64,000 bases of DNA. It comes from Vitrella brassicaformis CCMP3155 (Eukaryota; Protista; Chromerida). The translations under genes were made by a program, and so were the position numbers. Within the stretch, counting starts at the first letter, position 1; each line of letters starts with the position of its first letter. The notes beneath the pieces are model-generated. The model made no database searches. It was not told the origin of the DNA and saw only the letters and a list, made by a program, of their open reading frames with translations. The stretch is taken from the NCBI GenBank assembly GCA_001179505.1, contig CDMY01000385.1:1-64000 (forward strand), written 5' to 3'. This document shows, piece by piece, positions 3,558-10,707 of the stretch.

Positions 3558-5330
3558 ATGGATTCGGGAGAGCTCAGCGGAGGTGCAGCAGGGCAGCAAC
3601 GCGGCGGCAACACGGCCGCGCAGATGACATATGCTTACGTGCTGCCGCAGAATGGCGGCATCGCGCCTCAGGCTCAGCCTGGCGGGCACACTGCCGCACC
3701 CTTGATGGATCCTTACGGGCACTACAGCGGATGGCAGGGGCAACAGCAGCCTGGTATATGGGATAAGCCACTGGTGTGGAGAAAACAAACGCCCCGCATG
3801 CAGAAAGCAAACATCACACATCACTGGTGGACTGCTGTGTGTGGATGGATGGATGTGCTCAGGTTCGTCGACGTCCACGATGGCCATGATGCAGCCCTAT
3901 TCTCTACACGGGGCGGCGGCGGCGGCGGCGGCTGCCGTGCCGATGAGTGGCCCATCGCCTGGGCCCCAGCTGCCCGTGTACCCCCCCGCACCACCCCGCC
4001 ACACTGACCAGGCTGCCTCTGCTGCTCAGAATGGCGCCTCCTACACCACCCAGCAGCTATGTGCGGCATACCCCTACGCCATGATCCCGCAAGCGGGCAG
4101 CAGCCACCCCCCACCCCCACACCCGCCCTTCAGGTCATCCTCAGACGCCAATGGATTCCGACACCCCATGTGGCCGCAACCCTGCTACCACCCCCATCCC
4201 TCGCCAGATGCGCAGACAGCCCAAGCAGTCCCTCCCCCGCCCGCTGCGGGTTCGTCACATCATCGCATCGATGGCTCGGGCAGAAAGAGGGACAGGCCGC
4301 ATGACGTTGACGAGGGAGAAGAAGCCAATGGCGACCTGTCTTTGATGGGCGAGCAGTTCTATCAAGCGATGGGTTATGGCAACGAGGAGATGACAGCCAA
4401 TTGCGCCAACGGCGATGGCCTGCTTGTGGTTCAAACGCGGCACGGCCCCGTGACGCTCGACCTTTACAGAGGCCTTCGTAACTCAGAGGCGTTTGGGGCT
4501 CCAGTCAGGGGGCCGAGGGTGGGTGAGAGGAGCACGGCCATCACCGACAATGACCACTCATCCGCCGACTGCCTGCTCGAACCCGCCACACCTCCCGAAC
4601 CGCCCATGGACCCACCACCACCACCAGCAGCGGCAGCAGCACACCCCCCTTCAGGACCACAGCCACTAGCCGAAATAGGAGGAGATGACATAGGGCCCAG
4701 CAGCCGAGTCGCGCTGAAGCCGCCGGTCAAGCGCGTCAAGTCGCACCAGTACGACGTGCAGAAGGAGAGAGGGCACCGCGCGGCGTATCGATGTTCCCAG
4801 GGGGCTGCCAGTCATGCGATGGGGCAGCGGGAGCAGCAGCTCCACCACCAGCCGGTGATGCGGATGATGACCAGCAGGAGGGAGGAAGGAGCCCCTCCCT
4901 CCCATATGAATGGCACTGGTGAGAGGGAGGGAGGGAGGGAGGGACGGGGGATGAAAGCGCCTTGTCCCTTATGTTGTCTTGTGTTGTCTTGTATTGTGTT
5001 GTGTTGTGCTGTGTGTGAGTGTCAGGTCCGGTGGCGATGTCTATCTTCCCGACGATGCCGCGGCTGGCAAGCACCACCCCTGACGAACAGTCACATCCTG
5101 CCGCCCTCCCCGCCCCCTCCACTGCTGCCAGTGCACTATATCAGCCTTTGCCGAACCAAATAGCAGCAGCAGCTAAAGACCTAGATGCACCACCCACGAT
5201 GGCTGAGGTGGCGAATGCCCTGTCGGGTGTGAGCAACGGGCGTCCAGTAGTGGCACTGGGAGGCCAGTCGTCATCAACCCCCCCAGGTGGGCGGGTTTCT
5301 GTCGGTGTGCCCATCCTGCACGACGAGTGA
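3558..5330 (+). CDS. Low-complexity Pro/Gln/His/Ala-rich hypothetical protein (3 exons)
   Basis: ATG at 3558, intron about 3754-3863, long in-frame exon, intron about 4918-5025 with (TG)n before cag, TGA at 5328-5330. No recognisable domain. Confidence 0.6.
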
Positions 5331-5412
5331 CATGACAGAGCCATCCATCGTGGCTGGCTGGCGTAGATGGCCATGGGTTGAAGGCCATGAGTGAGGTGAG
5401 GTAGTGTGTGTG

Positions 5413-5443
<31 letters not shown>

Positions 5444-5779
5444 TGGTCGGGCCAGTGAGGCAGAGAGGCTAATTACGGCGAGTAAGCAGCACTCACTCAT
5501 TCACTCACTCACTCACTCGCGTGTGTGTGTCCCTCCTCAACCCCACAGTGTTTGGTTTGGTTGTGCATAGCAAGACATATAAGATGGCGCGGACTACTGT
5601 CCATGTCGTAATTCAACCATTTAGGGCCAGGTGGCGTGCGATGAGTGCGATCCGCGATCTCAAATCGGTGAAGAGGGACGCGCCAACGAAGAGAGCGTAG
5701 ATCTGGACAGCATACATCTCGCTCATCTCATTGCAGGCCTCCAAGGACAGATCGGTCCTTTCCTTAACTGCCATCAGCC

Positions 5780-8388
5780 ATGAAAGGTCCTTGGAGGCCA
5801 TCATGGTGCTTCCCGCTGCTGGTGTCGCTGTTCATGGACATCAGGACGCTGCACGCCCTCTCCCCTCCCTCGCTTGCCTTCAAGGTACGGCCGAGGGACA
5901 GCCAGACGGCCAGGCAGACGGAGCGTTCTGCACAGATCTGTGGAAGGAAGCCATTCATCCCCTCACTTGTTTGATGTCCATGTGTTGTGTGCAGGGTGGC
6001 TTCCGAGGCTCCAAACAACCGATTGTATGCCACACACCGGACAGCCAAACGAGCCAGCCTGTGATAGACAGTCCACCCAACGGAACGCACCCCCCTTATG
6101 TCTGTCGTCTGTTTGTCTATCTATCCCCAGGAGCTCTTGTCGTCCACTGGCAAGGCGGCGAGTGAGCGGGAGATCACTCAGTTCCTGGGCGAGCTCGCCC
6201 GTCAGGACACCAAGGAGGGCAACCTGCCTGTCATCGCCGCCATCGGGCCGGGAGGGCGGCGGAAACGCGCCTTCCTCAACCAGCTGTGTGGGTCGGACCT
6301 CGACGCCTCTAAGTTCCTACCAACCGCACCAAGTGAGTGAGATAGATGACAACACGACAGCACACAACACACTGGCCAGCCCAGCCATGCTCGGGTCCTT
6401 AACCTTGCTGAATGAAGGTGCGTCGCTGTCCGGCGCTCCGGAGATCGGCAATACCGCGGTGGTGCTGGATGTGTCGACGTTGGCCAGCCTGCCGGCCGAC
6501 ACGGACGAGGAGGACAAGCTGACGACGGGGCAGATGATGGCGCTGGCGTGTCCTCTGTGGGGCGTGTGTGTGCTGCCCGTATGGCAGAGCGAGGTGGTGG
6601 ATGGCGGGGGGCTGCCGTCGTCCGTGTCGTCGCTGCTGCTCAAGGTGGTCAGGGAGGAGGTCCGCGGCAGGAGAGGTGCTGGTGGTGGCGGCAGGTCAGA
6701 GGGGAGGAAGGCAGGCCCACTGAAGATCATATTCGCCGTGCAGGTAAGTCAGTCGGACACAAAGCCCTAACATGCATCACATTCGTGACCTGACATGGGT
6801 GTTGTGGGTTTGTCGACTGACTGACAGGGTGGCGACGGCACGCTGTCGTCCAGTGACGCCACCAAGGCTTTCACCAAGGGCATGAGCGACCTCTTCTCCG
6901 CTCTCGAGAAGCCTCCAGGCCTCCAGGGCGGCATGGCAGGCCTCGTCGACGTCACGGCTGTCGTCCTGCCGTCGTCCAAGTATCGCCCGCAGGAGTACCA
7001 GAAGGCCCTGGTGGAGCTGCGGCAGGTGGTCAAGGGTGCGGCGGACAAGGCCAAGAGCAGCCGCGGCGTGAGGGGGTCGCAGCTTCCGGGGACCGTGGGT
7101 GGCATGTGGGCGGCAGTGAGGGAGCGACTTGACGTTTCCACCGACAGCCCCTCTGTGGCAGTGCTCGCGGCATCGGCACACGCCACCAGCACGGCCGACC
7201 TGCTCATGGACGCTGCTAAGGTGCGAGGGTGTGCCTACTTTTATACCACGTTGGGAAGAATTGGATGTGGTGTGTTTGATCGGATCAATCAGGTGACATT
7301 GAGCCAGTGGAAGCGGCGTGTGGACCGCGGGACGGTGACGGATGACTTCGGCCACCGGGCGCACACCCTCATCACATCCACACTTGACCAATACGACCGG
7401 AACACACAGATGGACGGGGTACGGTAAATGCTTTATGCAAACCAAGTGGATGGATGGCCATGACGAGAATGCAATCCATACGCACGCTTCGCTTCACGAC
7501 TGACTGACTCCTGCCTTTACCATGGATGGACTTGACTTGTTTGTCCGTGCAGCTGAGTTCAATGCGTCAGCGGAGACGCGACGAGATCCGATCGACACTC
7601 GAGGCCGACGTCAGGGACCTCTTCAACAGGCAGCTGGCACTGCTGCAGCGGCGGTCTTTGAAGGACCTGCGCGAGAAGCTCGTGGCGGCACTCACCCCGC
7701 AGGGCAGCGTCGAGGCCAACCAAGAGGCCGCCGCACTCAGACAGGTCAGTGCAGTCAGTACACCACCACCTACCCAACATGAGTTGATGGCTGCGATGCG
7801 ATGCGATGCAGGTAGAGTTCACCTTTGACGAGTCGTCGAGCGATCTGCTGGTCAGCTGCATGGCCGACGAGCTCAAACCCGCCATCGACGAGGCCAAGAA
7901 GACCCTCATGGACCGCCTACGGGCCTACGCGGGCAAGTTCCCCGAGAGCAACGAAGCCAAGGTGCAGGCCAGGCTGCGAATGGAGGAGCGAATGCGGCCC
8001 CAGCAGCAGCAGCAGCGGGCGGGCGGCAAGAAGGCCAAGAGGGAGAGGGCCTTCGGCATGCGCCTGGCGCTGGCCAGCATGGTCAGGCAGGACGGCAACG
8101 GCAACCTACAGGGATTCGCCTCGTACGACGCCGGACCATTCTCCATGATCATGGGGTGCGTGGGCCACAGAACGCACAGGCAGCTGGGGGATATGAGATG
8201 TCTGACTGTCTGTCCGACCGACTTTGTGTCTGTCTGTCTGCTTGTGTGTGTGTGTGTGTGTGTGTTTGGTGTGTGTGGTGTGTGTCAGATATGCGAATGA
8301 CCGGGACACGCCCGAGGCGATGCAGAACGGCGAAAAGCCGCCATTCCTCAGACTGCAGCCAAAGATACACCTGGACATCGACCTGTGA
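5780..8388 (+). CDS. Sey1/RHD3 (atlastin-family)-like protein with degenerate GTPase motifs, N-terminal signal peptide and unrelated C-terminal domain (about 9 exons)
   Basis: Spliced translation aligns in order with Sey1 landmarks: VIAAIGPGGRRKRAFLNQLCG (P-loop region), VVLDVST (G3 DVEG), KIIFAVQ, DLFSALEKPPGL, VTAVVLPSSKYRPQEY, GMWAAV. It ends GNLQGFASYDAGPFSMIMGYANDRD...PPFLRLQPKIHLDIDL*. Confidence 0.7.
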
Positions 8389-8676
8389 GAGGGGTGCCGT
8401 GCCACGGGGGGGAAACACACACCACACGAGAGATGCGATGCATGGTGCAGTAGAGTACGTCGGTGCAAGATGTGATTGATGGGCAAGATGGACGGTTTTT
8501 GTCGTGGCTGGCGTTGCGTGGTCTGCGAATGCAGTCGCTGAGCAGCTGCTTGTGTATGTTTAAATTTTTGATTTACTCACACGCATGAATCGGTTCGCGA
8601 TCCATCCCACCTTCAAGTTCTCAGCTCGCATTTTGTCCTTCTGCTCGTCCATCCTTCCTTGCGAAAGACCAGGGAA

Positions 8677-10707
8677 ATGCACTTGGACTGGTCAGGCCAG
8701 GTCGGAGGCTGGCTGCTGCTGCTTGCAGCAGTCATCGTCGCTCTCTCGTTTGACTTGTGGAGCATTCGGCGCCCGCAACAACAGGGCGGGCTGAGCATCG
8801 TCCAGGCCTGCCGCCTGTCTGTGTTTTGGATTGTGTGTGGGCTGGCGTTCGGTGCGTCCGTCTGTGTCATCAACGGGGTGGAGGCCGCCACATACTGGTC
8901 AGCTCATCCCGTGTGCTGTGCTGTGCCGTCGACAATACATATAACGGGCTTTCTGTGTGCTGTCTGTGCTTGCACTGCACTGGCTGCAGGGTTGATGGTT
9001 ATCTGCTCGAATACATGCTCAGGTGGGTGAGGGGATGCATAGCAGTGAGTTAGTGTGAGTGACACACAGAGAAGGAAAGGAGTTAAAGGACGGGACGGAG
9101 GCACATGCACATGCACATGCACATGCACATGCACATGCACATGCACATTTGTTTGTTTGTTTCTTCTCTGGCGGCTTGGCTTGGCTTGCGTGTCTGCCCT
9201 CTGTCTGTGTGGCTCTGTGTCTGTCTGTGTCACCAGTCTAGACAATCTGTTTATTTTCCACCTGGTGTTCGAGACTTACCACACACCCGATGCCCTCAGG
9301 AGGAAAGCCCTCTTCTACGGTGACTGACTGACCGACTTCCCGCACAGACAGACAGACAGACGAGGTGGCATGGCCTGGCCTGCCTGGACAGACAGTGACG
9401 AACGTCTGTGCCTTCCTGCCTTCCTGCCTGCCTCTCTGTGTGTGAGTAGGTGTGGCTGGAGCAGTGCTGTTCCGCCTTATCCTGTTCGCCCTGTAGGCGT
9501 TGAGTGGTGCATGTCTGGAATATGCATACCAGTCAGTACGCCCCTTGTGTGTGTGTGTGTGTGTGTGTGCAGAGCTGAGTATTTCATGCACCTGATGTTT
9601 ATCGCGCACCTGGTCTTCGGCGCATTCCTGTAAGTCAGTTAAGTCAGCCGAAAGGAGAATCCCTCCCTCCCTCCATGAGGCTTCCTTCCTGTTCGTTCTG
9701 TTTGTGTGTGGCGTGTCGTGTCGTGGCGTCTGTCCTGTCTGTCGGTGTGTGAGAGCAGCGTGTATAGCGGCGTCAAGACGGCTCTCCCCGGCAACGCTGA
9801 CGACCCCGACCCCTCGCAAAACGCATGTGTCAGATTCATCACCCGATATGTCCCAGGTGAGCAGGGTGGGCAGGGTGGGTCGGCCACTAAGTGAACGAAC
9901 CAGGCAGGACAGACACAGACATGTCAGTCAGTTGTCGTGCCTGCCTGCCTGTCTGCCTGCCTGCATGGATGCAGTGACTCCATCGTATGACGACAGCGGT
10001 GCCTTCTTCGTGCTCACGTCATCCTCAGCCACACAAGAAGAGGACGACAGCAGCGCCATACACCACAGACTCGATGACGCTGGTGCCCTGCACCCACCGC
10101 ATCCCAATCCCCCTTCACATATGCTCTCCGACACAACCACAACTACTGTCACCGCACCAGCCACACCACCACAAGAGCCACCATTACACGAAGCAGCCGA
10201 CAACAACCCAGCACCGAGACGGCGTGGCAGCGGTGCATCCGACGGCCCCCAGCTGACTGAGTACGAGCCACTGGACGCGACGATGGCCACAACGACGGAC
10301 GGGTCGCCGTCGACGAGCGCGTCGACGCAGCCTGGTGGGCAGGGACACAGGCAAGGAGGTGGGGGGGTGAAGATGGTGGGTGGCGTGAGGGAAGATGGTG
10401 ACGGTGGGGGGGTCGGAGAGGGGCTTCTGCTGTCGAGGGAACGAAGGAGGTGGAAGGTGAGACACCGACAAAGACAGACACCGACACGGAGGGAGGAAGG
10501 CGCGTGTCTTAATTGTCGATCTGTCTGTGCTCTCTCTTTTTGTATGCATGTCATGCGGCCTGTCCAGGCCACTCTCCTCTTTGTGGTTGTGGTCTGCATG
10601 GTGGGTGAGCACAGCATATGTGGAGGAGACACATTAATTGCACTCAGGGGCGTACAGTACAGTTGGCTGGCTGCTGGATCGCATCGTTCGAACTATGCTC
10701 CCTCTCT

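What the first reader, a model, noticed from the sequence alone, without database searches (positions are those of the whole stretch)
5780..8388. Sey1/RHD3-derived pseudo-GTPase apparently retargeted into the secretory or complex-plastid pathway
Seen: the fold landmarks of Sey1/RHD3 are present in order, but the catalytic motifs are degenerate (G1 GxxxxGKS becomes GPGGRRKR; G3 DVEG becomes DVST). The N-terminus is a hydrophobic signal-like leader (MKGPWRPSWCFPLLVSLF...SLA-FKGG), and I see no C-terminal transmembrane hairpin. Known: true Sey1/atlastins are cytosol-facing ER fusion GTPases without signal peptides, anchored by a C-terminal hairpin. Red-lineage complex plastids use signal+transit leaders, often with Phe at +1, and have repurposed symbiont ER machinery (SELMA). 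Inference: a catalytically dead Sey1 paralog acting as a membrane scaffold or tether in a plastid or periplastid compartment.
Basis: partly seen in the sequence, partly recalled or inferred. Interest (0 to 1): 0.78.

Follow-up and report, generated by a model that had tools for sequence, protein, structure and literature searches.

The report
Periplastid-type dead Sey1 GTPase, Vitrella
This is an expressed Vitrella brassicaformis gene for a Sey1/RHD3-like protein that has a signal-type leader, ruined GTP-binding motifs and no membrane anchor. It fits an already described family of Sey1-like plastid protein-import factors (PPP1/PTF) in algae with red-derived plastids, so it is a new member and not a new kind.

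Summary
Window 5780-8388 (+) is a 9-exon gene of Vitrella brassicaformis (CEM08180.1, 605 aa). Spliced transcript contigs support every junction, and ATG 5780 is the first AUG in the mRNA.

A profile of this protein plus its one retrievable full-length relative (Rhizochromulina, an ochrophyte) hits Candida Sey1p at E=9.6e-13. Foldseek and the ESM Atlas agree with that.

- **G motifs:** G1-G4 are degenerate (GPGGRRKR, switch 1 unaligned, DVST, RD replaced by QG). The ochrophyte relative is degenerate in a different way (GAPGCGRE).
- **Membrane anchor:** there is no transmembrane hairpin.
- **Leader:** both proteins start with a hydrophobic leader.
- **C-terminus:** both share a strongly conserved end, GNLQGF...LRLQPKIHLDIDL.

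TM-less Sey1-like proteins of red-algal origin are already described:

- Toxoplasma and diatom PPP1;
- diatom sORF261/532a/534, localised to the periplastid compartment;
- cryptophyte nucleomorph ORFs;
- red-algal PTF1-3, which bind transit peptides.

The likeliest role is therefore preprotein targeting in the periplastid compartment, not membrane tethering. I could not determine which paralogue it is orthologous to, and I could not run SignalP or ASAFind. The shared loss of the GTP motifs in two lineages is the modestly new detail.

The parts
5661..5779 (+). 5' UTR (minimum extent), with no upstream ATG; in-frame TAA at 5765
   Evidence: Transcript contigs L003 and L004 are colinear with the genome back to 5681 and 5661. 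Stop codon found.
5780..5884 (+). Exon 1, residues 1-35. Signal-like leader: basic n-region MKGPWRPS, 11-residue hydrophobic core WCFPLLVSLFM, then DIRTLHALSPPSLA-FK
   Evidence: Mean KD over the 11-residue core is 2.03. The ochrophyte homologue has a hydrophobic signal-type leader, MAGPVLVLLALALCGG, aligned at the same place.
5995..6024 (+). Exon 2, residues 36-45, GGFRGSKQPI. Short, basic, acid-free stretch between the leader and the conserved domain; a possible minimal transit-peptide-like region
   Evidence: Present in spliced transcripts L003 and L004. Fits the X2 record 5 depth bins.
6131..6332 (+). Exon 3, start of the G domain, including the degenerate P-loop
   Evidence: Acceptor 6131 is used in X2 record 5. 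Alignment to Sey1p.
6245..6268 (+). G1 / Walker A position. GPGGRRKR where Sey1p has GSQSTGKS: the Lys is kept, the Gly before it and the Ser after it are both Arg
   Evidence: alignment. P0005 has GAPGCGRE at the same position.
6418..6743 (+). Exon 4, G-domain core. Carries DVST at the G3 position (6468-6479) and ends with Q221, which stands where the Arg of the G4 'RD' motif should be
   Evidence: X1 record 3 starts at 6418 after 10 nt of exon 3..
6828..7220 (+). Exon 5, end of the G domain (G222 replaces the G4 Asp) and the linker into the stalk
   Evidence: Junctions confirmed in X1 record 3 and X2 record 6..
7293..7418 (+). Exon 6, stalk (Sey1 three-helix-bundle-like). The Pfam Sey1_3HB hit on residues 352-467 begins at the exon 5/6 junction
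   Evidence: 127 nt of the X1 contig lie between 7218 and 7552. Pfam E=0.0027.
7553..7744 (+). Exon 7, stalk helices
7812..8155 (+). Exon 8, helical region with the QQQQQ patch, followed by the start of the conserved C-terminal motif (MVRQDGNGNLQGFASYDAGPFSMIMG from 8079)
8289..8388 (+). Exon 9, YANDRDTPEAMQNGEKPPFLRLQPKIHLDIDL plus stop. An amphipathic, strand-like C-terminus that is nearly invariant in the three known members
8389..8554 (+). 3' UTR (minimum extent)
   Evidence: X1 record 3 extends to 8554.

Best explanation
The gene encodes the Vitrella brassicaformis member of the TM-less, Sey1/RHD3-derived protein family of red algae and red-plastid-bearing (CASH) lineages. That family includes PTF1-3, PPP1 and diatom sORF261/532a/534.

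Shown:
- It is transcribed and spliced.
- It begins with a hydrophobic secretory-type leader.
- It keeps the Sey1 G-domain-plus-stalk architecture but has lost the consensus at G1-G4.
- It lacks the TM hairpin.
- It ends in a domain that is highly conserved with an ochrophyte protein, which also carries a signal peptide and a dead P-loop.

Inferred:
- The leader takes the protein into the ER.
- The short basic stretch after the leader takes it on through SELMA into the periplastid compartment.
- There it acts without GTP hydrolysis as a preprotein (transit-peptide) binding or targeting factor, passing cargo from SELMA to the Omp85/TOC-type channel of the next membrane.
- It may work as a dimer with a GTP-competent paralogue.
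For: Sey1 homology:
- Profile of P0002+P0005 against PDB gives Sey1p 5ca8 at E=9.6e-13 over G domain plus stalk.
- Foldseek top hits are 5ca8 and 5ca9.
- The ESM Atlas structure match to an RHD3 cluster has TM 0.55 over residues 39-506, and all ten named embedding neighbours belong to the GB1/RHD3 clan.
- Pfam gives only a weak Sey1_3HB hit.

Ochrophyte homologue P0005:
- End-to-end BLASTP E=5e-51.
- P0005 passes the Pfam gathering scores for RHD3_GTPase (49.1 vs 42.4) and Sey1_3HB (24.1 vs 24).
- P0005 has the signal peptide MAGPVLVLLALALCGG and the P-loop GAPGCGRE.

Other sequence evidence:
- A third member, L001, shares the C-terminal motif.
- No TM segment.
- The start codon is fixed by transcripts.

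Literature:
- PTF1-3 are Sey1/RHD3-like, lack TMs, have a conserved Q-containing C-terminal domain shared with PPP1, and bind transit peptides (PMC9407449).
- PPP1 is peripheral or periplastid and essential for apicoplast import (PMC3228799).
- Three diatom homologues of the nucleomorph Sey1-like ORFs are PPC-directed (PMC3101018; PMC6559170).
- Three Sey1-like paralogues of red-algal origin occur in CASH lineages (PMC12412216).
Against: - I could not retrieve any PPP1, PTF or sORF sequence, so membership rests on architecture, Atlas neighbours (leads only) and the literature. There is no alignment or tree.
- PTF1-3 are described as having a typical GTP-binding motif, which this protein lacks.
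- Diatom PPP1 is described as lacking the N-terminal GTP-binding domain, which this protein retains.
- The stretch between leader and conserved domain is only about 10 residues, which is short for a transit peptide.
- If cleavage is at SLA|F, the +1 Phe would predict stromal import, not PPC retention, under the diatom rule.
- No signal-peptide predictor, localisation data or nucleotide-binding assay was available.
- Both AF2 models were of low confidence (pLDDT 43 and 47).
Confidence: 0.62

Rival explanations
1. It is a periplastid or plastid-envelope structural factor, acting as a membrane tether or scaffold or in plastid division, and not as a preprotein-targeting factor.'s suggestion for nucleomorph Sey1-like ORFs.
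For: It descends from Sey1. The C. merolae homologue CMD101C was detected in a plastid-dividing-machinery proteome, and Zauner et al. favour a division role (PMC6559170). The long helical stalk is retained.
Against: There is no TM hairpin or other membrane anchor. The G motifs that Sey1 needs for nucleotide-dependent dimerisation and tethering are degenerate (the P-loop mutant K50A is non-functional, PMC4576867). Direct biochemistry on the family shows transit-peptide binding (PMC9407449), and PPP1 depletion blocks import (PMC3228799).
Confidence: 0.17
2. It is imported all the way into the plastid stroma or the intermembrane space, because cleavage at SLA|F exposes a +1 Phe. It would then do a job unrelated to the PPC.
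For: The sequence SLA-F resembles the ASAF-type cleavage motif with a +1 aromatic residue. The residues after it are basic and free of acidic residues.
Against: The cleavage site is not predicted by any tool here, and it lies 14 residues after the hydrophobic core. The ochrophyte homologue has no aromatic residue after its signal peptide (GG/VSASS), which fits PPC retention. All localised relatives are PPC or peripheral (PMC3101018, PMC3228799).
Confidence: 0.1
3. It is a secretory-pathway or ER-lumen protein with no plastid role. The signal peptide alone determines its destination.
For: The hydrophobic leader is followed by only about 10 residues before the conserved domain. No transit-peptide predictor was run.
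Against: The only homologues found come from a plastid-bearing ochrophyte and a marine contig. The nearest Atlas clusters are red-algal and diatom. The C-terminus (DIDL, DVDL, DIDA) is not a conserved KDEL-type signal. The literature places Sey1-like proteins with signal peptides in the PPC.
Confidence: 0.07
4. It is still an active, non-canonical GTPase.
For: The P-loop Lys and the G3 Asp are retained in P0002.
Against: The Mg-coordinating Ser/Thr is Arg, the Gly before the Lys is Arg, the G3 Gly is missing, the RD motif is QG, and the switch 1 region does not align. The homologue has lost a different set of residues (K to R, S to E, RD to HS), which is the pattern expected when constraint on the nucleotide site is relaxed.
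Confidence: 0.06

Closest known systems
Red-algal PTF1-3 (Cyanidioschyzon CMI311C, CMD101C, CMQ054C; Baek et al. 2022, PMC9407449)
   Same: A Sey1/RHD3-like N-terminal region of about 400-500 aa, no TM segments, a total length of about 550-600 aa, and a distinct conserved C-terminal domain containing glutamines. The best ESM Atlas neighbour is a red-algal cluster of about 541 aa carrying RHD3_GTPase and Sey1_3HB.
   Different: PTF1-3 are cytosolic, have no signal peptide and carry a typical GTP-binding motif. This protein has a signal-type leader and degenerate G1-G4. No direct alignment to a PTF sequence could be made.
PPP1 (Toxoplasma TGME49_287270, formerly 087270; Thalassiosira 267353; Sheiner et al. 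2011, PMC3228799)
   Same: Restricted to the red lineage, routed through the secretory pathway, and peripheral or periplastid. The conserved block lies at the extreme C-terminus and includes glutamines. The C-terminal residues deduced from published cloning primers (Tg ..LSVN[F/L]VC, Tp ..GLSLNLSY) form the same alternating hydrophobic/polar strand, in register with ..KIHLDIDL here.
   Different: PPP1 is reported to lack the N-terminal GTP-binding domain in diatoms and to have an unrelated N-terminus in Apicomplexa. This protein keeps the whole Sey1-like fold. The C-terminal residues group by family and not by taxon, which suggests a paralogue and not the PPP1 orthologue.
Diatom sORF261/sORF532a/sORF534 and the Guillardia nucleomorph ORFs 261/532a/534 (Moog 2011, PMC3101018; Zauner 2019, PMC6559170)
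   Same: In diatoms these are nucleus-encoded, PPC-directed homologues of nucleomorph ORFs that Phyre2 identifies as Sey1-like. They are conserved in lineages whose secondary endosymbiont was a red alga.
   Different: Which of the three (if any) is the orthologue was not determined. The state of their G motifs is not described in the texts I read.
Sey1p / RHD3 / atlastin ER fusogens (structure 5ca8/5ca9; PMC4576867)
   Same: A GB1/RHD3-type G-domain fold followed by a helical stalk, in the same order.
   Different: The fusogens have intact G1-G4 including the RD motif, two C-terminal TM segments, a cytosolic orientation and no signal peptide. All four of these features fail here.

Membership tests
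Sey1/RHD3 ER-fusion GTPases | GB1/RHD3-type G-domain fold followed by a helical (3HB) stalk | tested here: met
   The P0002+P0005 profile hits Sey1p 5ca8 at E=9.6e-13 over residues 52-427. Foldseek's top hits are 5ca8 and 5ca9. Atlas TM is 0.55 to an RHD3 cluster. Homologue P0005 passes the Pfam gathering scores for RHD3_GTPase and Sey1_3HB. P0002 alone gets only Sey1_3HB at E=0.0027, below threshold.
Sey1/RHD3 ER-fusion GTPases | Intact G1 (GxxxxGKS/T), G2 Thr, G3 DxxG and G4 RD motifs | tested here: not met
   G1 is GPGGRRKR, switch 1 is unaligned, G3 is DVST and G4 is QG. The motif definitions come from PMC4576867.
Sey1/RHD3 ER-fusion GTPases | Two closely spaced C-terminal TM segments | tested here: not met
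   The highest 19-residue KD mean is 1.46, inside the G domain, with nothing comparable in the C-terminal half.
Sey1/RHD3 ER-fusion GTPases | Cytosolic protein without a signal peptide | tested here: not met
   An N-terminal basic region plus an 11-residue hydrophobic core is encoded from the first AUG of the mRNA. The homologue has a hydrophobic signal-type leader at the same place. No predictor was run.
PTF/PPP1/sORF family (TM-less Sey1-like proteins of red algae and CASH lineages) | Sey1/RHD3-like N-terminal 400-500 aa without TM segments | tested here: met
PTF/PPP1/sORF family (TM-less Sey1-like proteins of red algae and CASH lineages) | C-terminal domain of about 200 aa with conserved glutamines, homologous to that of PPP1/PTF | tested here: inconclusive
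   A conserved C-terminal domain with invariant Q551, Q558 and Q596 and a QQQQQ patch exists. No PPP1 or PTF sequence could be fetched for alignment. The only comparison possible was with primer-derived 7-8-residue C-termini, which are similar in register.
PTF/PPP1/sORF family (TM-less Sey1-like proteins of red algae and CASH lineages) | Signal peptide or bipartite leader in lineages with complex plastids; PPC localisation | not testable with these tools
   Leaders were seen by eye in P0002 and P0005. SignalP, ASAFind and localisation experiments were not available.
PTF/PPP1/sORF family (TM-less Sey1-like proteins of red algae and CASH lineages) | Distribution restricted to red algae and red-plastid lineages | tested here: inconclusive
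   The only relatives retrieved were an ochrophyte protein and one marine contig. An exhaustive phmmer search with residues 222-394 against 1.84e9 representatives found only the protein itself. Atlas neighbours are red-algal and diatom clusters.
PTF1-3 sensu stricto | [quoted passage not shown] | tested here: not met
   compared with the description in PMC9407449.
PPP1 sensu stricto (orthologue of TgPPP1/TpPPP1) | No recognisable N-terminal GTP-binding domain; C-terminus of the ..LS[VL]N[FL].. type | tested here: inconclusive
   P0002 retains the Sey1-like G-domain fold, although Pfam cannot see it in P0002 alone. Its C-terminus is ..KIHLDIDL, against primer-derived ..LSVN[F/L]VC and ..GLSLNLSY. 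No tree was possible.

The most novel reading that the evidence does not exclude
P0002, P0005 and L001 define a distinct, previously uncharacterised subfamily of periplastid Sey1-like proteins. Its signature is the C-terminus GNLQGF..MGY.NDR..LRLQPK[IV]H[LF]D[IV]D. The GTP site in this subfamily decayed (independently, or early) after relocation into the periplastid compartment. By extension, the 'missing' or 'unrelated' N-terminal regions of diatom and apicomplexan PPP1 would be cryptic, degenerate Sey1 G domains. The red-lineage preprotein-targeting factors would then have become nucleotide-independent in complex plastids.
Probability: 0.3. Interest if true: 0.5.

Novelty: new member of a known kind. 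Interest (0 to 1): 0.32.

Why it matters
Red-derived complex plastids lack clear Toc34/159 receptors. The PPP1/PTF family is the leading candidate for the transit-peptide receptor between SELMA and the TOC-type channel, and PPP1 is essential in Toxoplasma.

A chromerid member that keeps the full Sey1 fold with dead nucleotide motifs, together with an ochrophyte counterpart that is degenerate in a different way, gives a link between GTP-competent red-algal PTFs and the N-terminally unrecognisable PPP1 of apicomplexans. It also suggests the import step does not need GTP hydrolysis by this factor.

This refines a known story. It does not open a new one.

Tried and rejected
**Gene models**
- My first two hand-built gene models were wrong at exon 2 and at the exon 4 acceptor. 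One used intron 5885-6130, the other a 105-nt exon at 5995-6099 followed by a 31-nt intron; both used acceptor 6385.
- I then inferred from depth bins a GC donor at 5914 and a start at ATG 5803, which would have removed the leader (note). That was also wrong. The 80 nt upstream of 6131 in X2 record 5 are the 30-nt exon 2 plus 50 nt of exon 1. This fits the depth bins exactly and matches the transcripts.
- The JGI model P0001, which starts at M19, is a gene-caller truncation. Its own contig contains ATG 5780.

**Searches that found nothing beyond the protein itself**
- Pfam on single exons.
- PDB phmmer with exon 5 and with the whole protein.
- Exhaustive phmmer with residues 222-394.
- Word-indexed search with the whole protein and with residues 500-605.
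- Metagenome scan with the single protein.
- Atlas search with the C-terminal part alone.

**Structure**
- AF2 gave poor models with one sequence and with a three-sequence alignment (pLDDT 43 and 47). I used them only for Foldseek's local 3Di+AA hits, and the TM-scores there are low (about 0.2).

**Literature look-ups**
- No supplementary text was held for PMC12412216, PMC9407449 or PMC6559170, and the supplements held for PMC7617431 contained no accession for this protein. I therefore found no published accession linking CEM08180.1 to a named paralogue.

**Ideas rejected**
- The C-terminal DIDL as a KDEL-like ER-retrieval signal. It is not canonical, and L001 ends in DIDA.
- My first reading of the TgPPP1 LIC primer as ..QRKLGM, which was out of frame. 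The second primer fixes the frame as ..LSVN[F/L]VC.

**Other**
Full report
**What is there**

The window is the start of Vitrella brassicaformis CCMP3155 contig CDMY01000385.1, and window coordinates equal record coordinates. The finding's span, 5780-8388, is exactly the CDS span of one + strand gene. Its product is CEM08180.1 / UniProt A0A0G4F860 (P0002, 605 aa), which is identical to the ORF of an MMETSP transcript.

The nine exons are 5780-5884, 5995-6024, 6131-6332, 6418-6743, 6828-7220, 7293-7418, 7553-7744, 7812-8155 and 8289-8388. They reproduce P0002 exactly, and all eight introns are GT-AG, 67-134 nt long.

**Expression and start codon**

Contigs from public runs are spliced at these junctions. 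X1 record 3 covers 6418 to 8554 across five introns. X2 records 5 and 6 cover acceptor 6131 and the 6743/6828 junction.

Two independent transcript contigs, JGI L003 and Logan SRR646408 L004, carry exons 1-2-3 joined. They run colinear with the genome upstream to 5681 and 5661. That 5' UTR has no ATG, and an in-frame TAA lies at 5765. ATG 5780 is therefore the first AUG of the mRNA, and the leader MKGPWRPSWCFPLLVSLFMDIRTLHALSPPSLAFK|GGFRGSKQPI is real. The refuter 'a different true start codon' fails. The shorter JGI model P0001 (start at M19) is a gene-caller artefact.

**Is it Sey1/RHD3-derived?**

On its own the protein is almost invisible to sequence searches:
- Pfam gives only Sey1_3HB at E=0.0027, below the gathering score.
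- PDB phmmer gives nothing.
- An exhaustive phmmer of residues 222-394 against 1.84 billion representatives returns only the protein itself.

A region-restricted search with the C-terminal 211 residues found one relative, P0005. It is from the dictyochophyte Rhizochromulina marina, is 555 aa long, and scored E=6.8e-21. The two proteins align end to end at 30% identity, E=5e-51. P0005 passes the Pfam gathering scores for RHD3_GTPase (49.1 vs 42.4 bits) and Sey1_3HB (24.1 vs 24).

A profile of the two proteins hits Candida albicans Sey1p (5ca8/5ca9/5cb2) at E=9.6e-13, covering profile columns 73-456 against Sey1p residues 52-427, which is the G domain plus the first part of the stalk. The next PDB hits have E>0.2.

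Structure-based evidence agrees:
- Foldseek with a low-confidence AF2 model ranks 5ca8 (8e-10) and 5ca9 (5e-7) first, then GBP1, atlastins and RNF112.
- The ESM Atlas's own model matches an RHD3 cluster at TM 0.55 over residues 39-506.
- All ten named embedding neighbours are in the GB1/RHD3 clan.

The fold claim is well beyond chance.

**Degenerate motifs and missing anchor**

The alignment gives the following.

| Motif | Sey1p | P0002 (Vitrella) | P0005 (Rhizochromulina) |
|---|---|---|---|
| G1 | GSQSTGKS | GPGGRRKR (Lys kept; flanking Gly and Ser both Arg) | GAPGCGRE |
| G2 / switch 1 | TTKGIW | no aligned counterpart | no aligned counterpart |
| G3 | DVEG | DVST | – |
| G4 | RD (definition in PMC4576867) | QG | HS |

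The two homologues have lost different key residues. This is what relaxed constraint on a nucleotide site looks like, so both are probably pseudo-GTPases. That is an inference; no assay was done.

No 19-residue window reaches TM-like hydrophobicity outside the N-terminal leader. The maximum is 1.46, within the G domain. The Sey1/RHD3 TM hairpin is absent in both proteins.

In its place is a helical region with a QQQQQ patch, followed by a nearly invariant C-terminus: M[VM]RQ.G.GNLQGF..Y..GP.S..MGY.NDR...LRLQPK[IV]H[LF]D[IV]D[LA]. A third, partial member from a marine contig (L001) shares it. The last eight residues alternate hydrophobic and polar, as in an amphipathic beta strand.

**Leader**

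P0002 has a basic n-region and an 11-residue hydrophobic core, with an 11-residue KD mean of 2.03. P0005 has a hydrophobic signal-type leader (MAGPVLVLLALALCGG, mean 3.01) aligned at the same place.

Only about 7-10 residues separate the likely cleavage region from the first conserved G-domain strand (PIELL / PIHVV). They are basic or Ser/Gly-rich and contain no acidic residue. I could not run SignalP or ASAFind, so the SLA|F cleavage site and the meaning of the +1 Phe remain untested.

**Comparison with what is known**

- Sheiner et al. 2011 (PMC3228799) found PPP1. It is a peripheral or periplastid protein essential for apicoplast import and restricted to red algae and red-plastid lineages. 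It has nucleomorph-encoded copies in cryptophytes, a Chromera EST homologue, and a conserved C-terminal block with a Q-rich patch.
- Moog et al. 2011 (PMC3101018) localised diatom homologues of Guillardia nucleomorph ORFs 261, 532a and 534 to the periplastid compartment.
- Zauner et al. 2019 (PMC6559170) showed by Phyre2 that those ORFs are Sey1-like.
- Baek et al. 2022 (PMC9407449) showed that red-algal PTF1-3 are Sey1/RHD3-like over 400-500 residues, lack the TM segments, share a Q-containing C-terminal domain with PPP1, and bind transit peptides.
- A 2025 phylogeny (PMC12412216) reports three Sey1-like paralogues of red-algal origin, including PPP1, in CASH genomes.
- A 2024 study finds PPP1 throughout red-plastid lineages and treats it as TOC-associated (PMC7617431).

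The Vitrella protein has this architecture, and its nearest Atlas clusters are a red-algal RHD3-like cluster of about 541 aa and a diatom cluster of about 544 aa (leads only).

**Which paralogue?**

This is unresolved, because I could not fetch any PPP1, PTF or sORF sequence. Two hints suggest it is not the PPP1 orthologue itself.
[quoted passage not shown] P0002 and the ochrophyte P0005 keep the fold.
- The C-termini deduced from published cloning primers are TgPPP1 ..LSVN[F/L]VC and TpPPP1 ..GLSLNLSY. They resemble each other more than they resemble ..KIHLDIDL..KIHLDVDL and ..KVHFDIDA, so the grouping follows family and not taxon. All of them share the same in-register alternating pattern, which is weak support for a homologous C-terminal element.

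The degenerate G domain of P0002 is undetectable by Pfam on the single sequence. It is therefore also possible that PPP1's 'missing' domain is a cryptic one.

Another scan note in this genome (s1-194574) reports a second GBP/atlastin-type GTPase with a predicted luminal orientation. That fits several such paralogues in Vitrella, but I did not examine it.

**Mechanism**

Shown:
- The gene is an expressed Sey1-fold protein.
- It has a secretory-type leader.
- Its G motifs are degenerate.
- It has no anchor.
- It has a conserved C-terminal domain.

Inferred:
- ER entry, followed by SELMA-dependent passage into the periplastid compartment.
- There, nucleotide-independent binding of transit peptides and hand-over to the Omp85/TOC-type channel.
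- Possibly a dimer with an active paralogue, since PTFs form homo- or heterodimers.

I put about 0.6 on this. About 0.17 goes to a structural or division role in the same compartment. Smaller shares go to stromal or purely secretory destinations, or to retained GTPase activity.

**Verdict**

The new elements are modest:
- the chromerid member itself;
- its ochrophyte counterpart;
- the shared but non-identical decay of the GTP site;
- a sharply conserved C-terminal signature.

**Surroundings**

The downstream + strand gene, from 8677, is a TerC-family membrane protein. The upstream + strand gene ends near 5330 and has no Pfam match.

Noticed in passing
window 8677 onward (+ strand; L005 4398-5609): The downstream neighbour is a TerC-family integral membrane protein (PF03741 on the 517-aa annotated product). 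Spliced RNA contigs cover 8760-8896 and 9234-9322. Single-exon ORFs from it gave no Pfam hit on their own.
   Followed up: partly
window about 3841-5330 (+ strand; L005 1-1051): The upstream neighbour encodes a 496-aa product rich in Pro, Ala and Gln with no Pfam family. Depth spikes in the DNA runs at 4552-4735 and 4920-5103 suggest repeated low-complexity sequence there.
   Followed up: no
window 5395-5532, 8197-8285, 9100-9160: (GT)n/(CA)n and related microsatellites lie in the intergenic region, in the last intron of the gene and in the neighbour's intron. Read laying skipped them as repeats, and contigs break there.
   Followed up: no
window 7864-8047: DNA-run depth rises roughly 15-fold over the CAG/Gln-coding stretch (QQQQQ, about 8001-8016). 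Many loose ends there read as CAG repeats, so this motif is shared with many other loci.
   Followed up: no
another piece of the same genome (note s1-194574): The scan also noted a second GBP/atlastin-type GTPase predicted to face the secretory lumen. It may be another of the three Sey1-like periplastid paralogues reported for CASH lineages, and a possible GTP-competent partner.
   Followed up: no
L003 154-1917 / P0001: The JGI gene call for the same transcript starts at Met19 (MDIRTL...), although the contig contains the upstream in-frame ATG. The database therefore holds a leaderless version of this protein.
   Followed up: yes
L001 1-600 (contig Ga0073960_11328841): A marine metagenome or metatranscriptome contig encodes a third family member (C-terminal 199 aa, 38% identity) that ends ..LRLQPKVHFDIDA. 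The remaining 2 kb of the contig were not examined, and its organism is unknown.
   Followed up: partly
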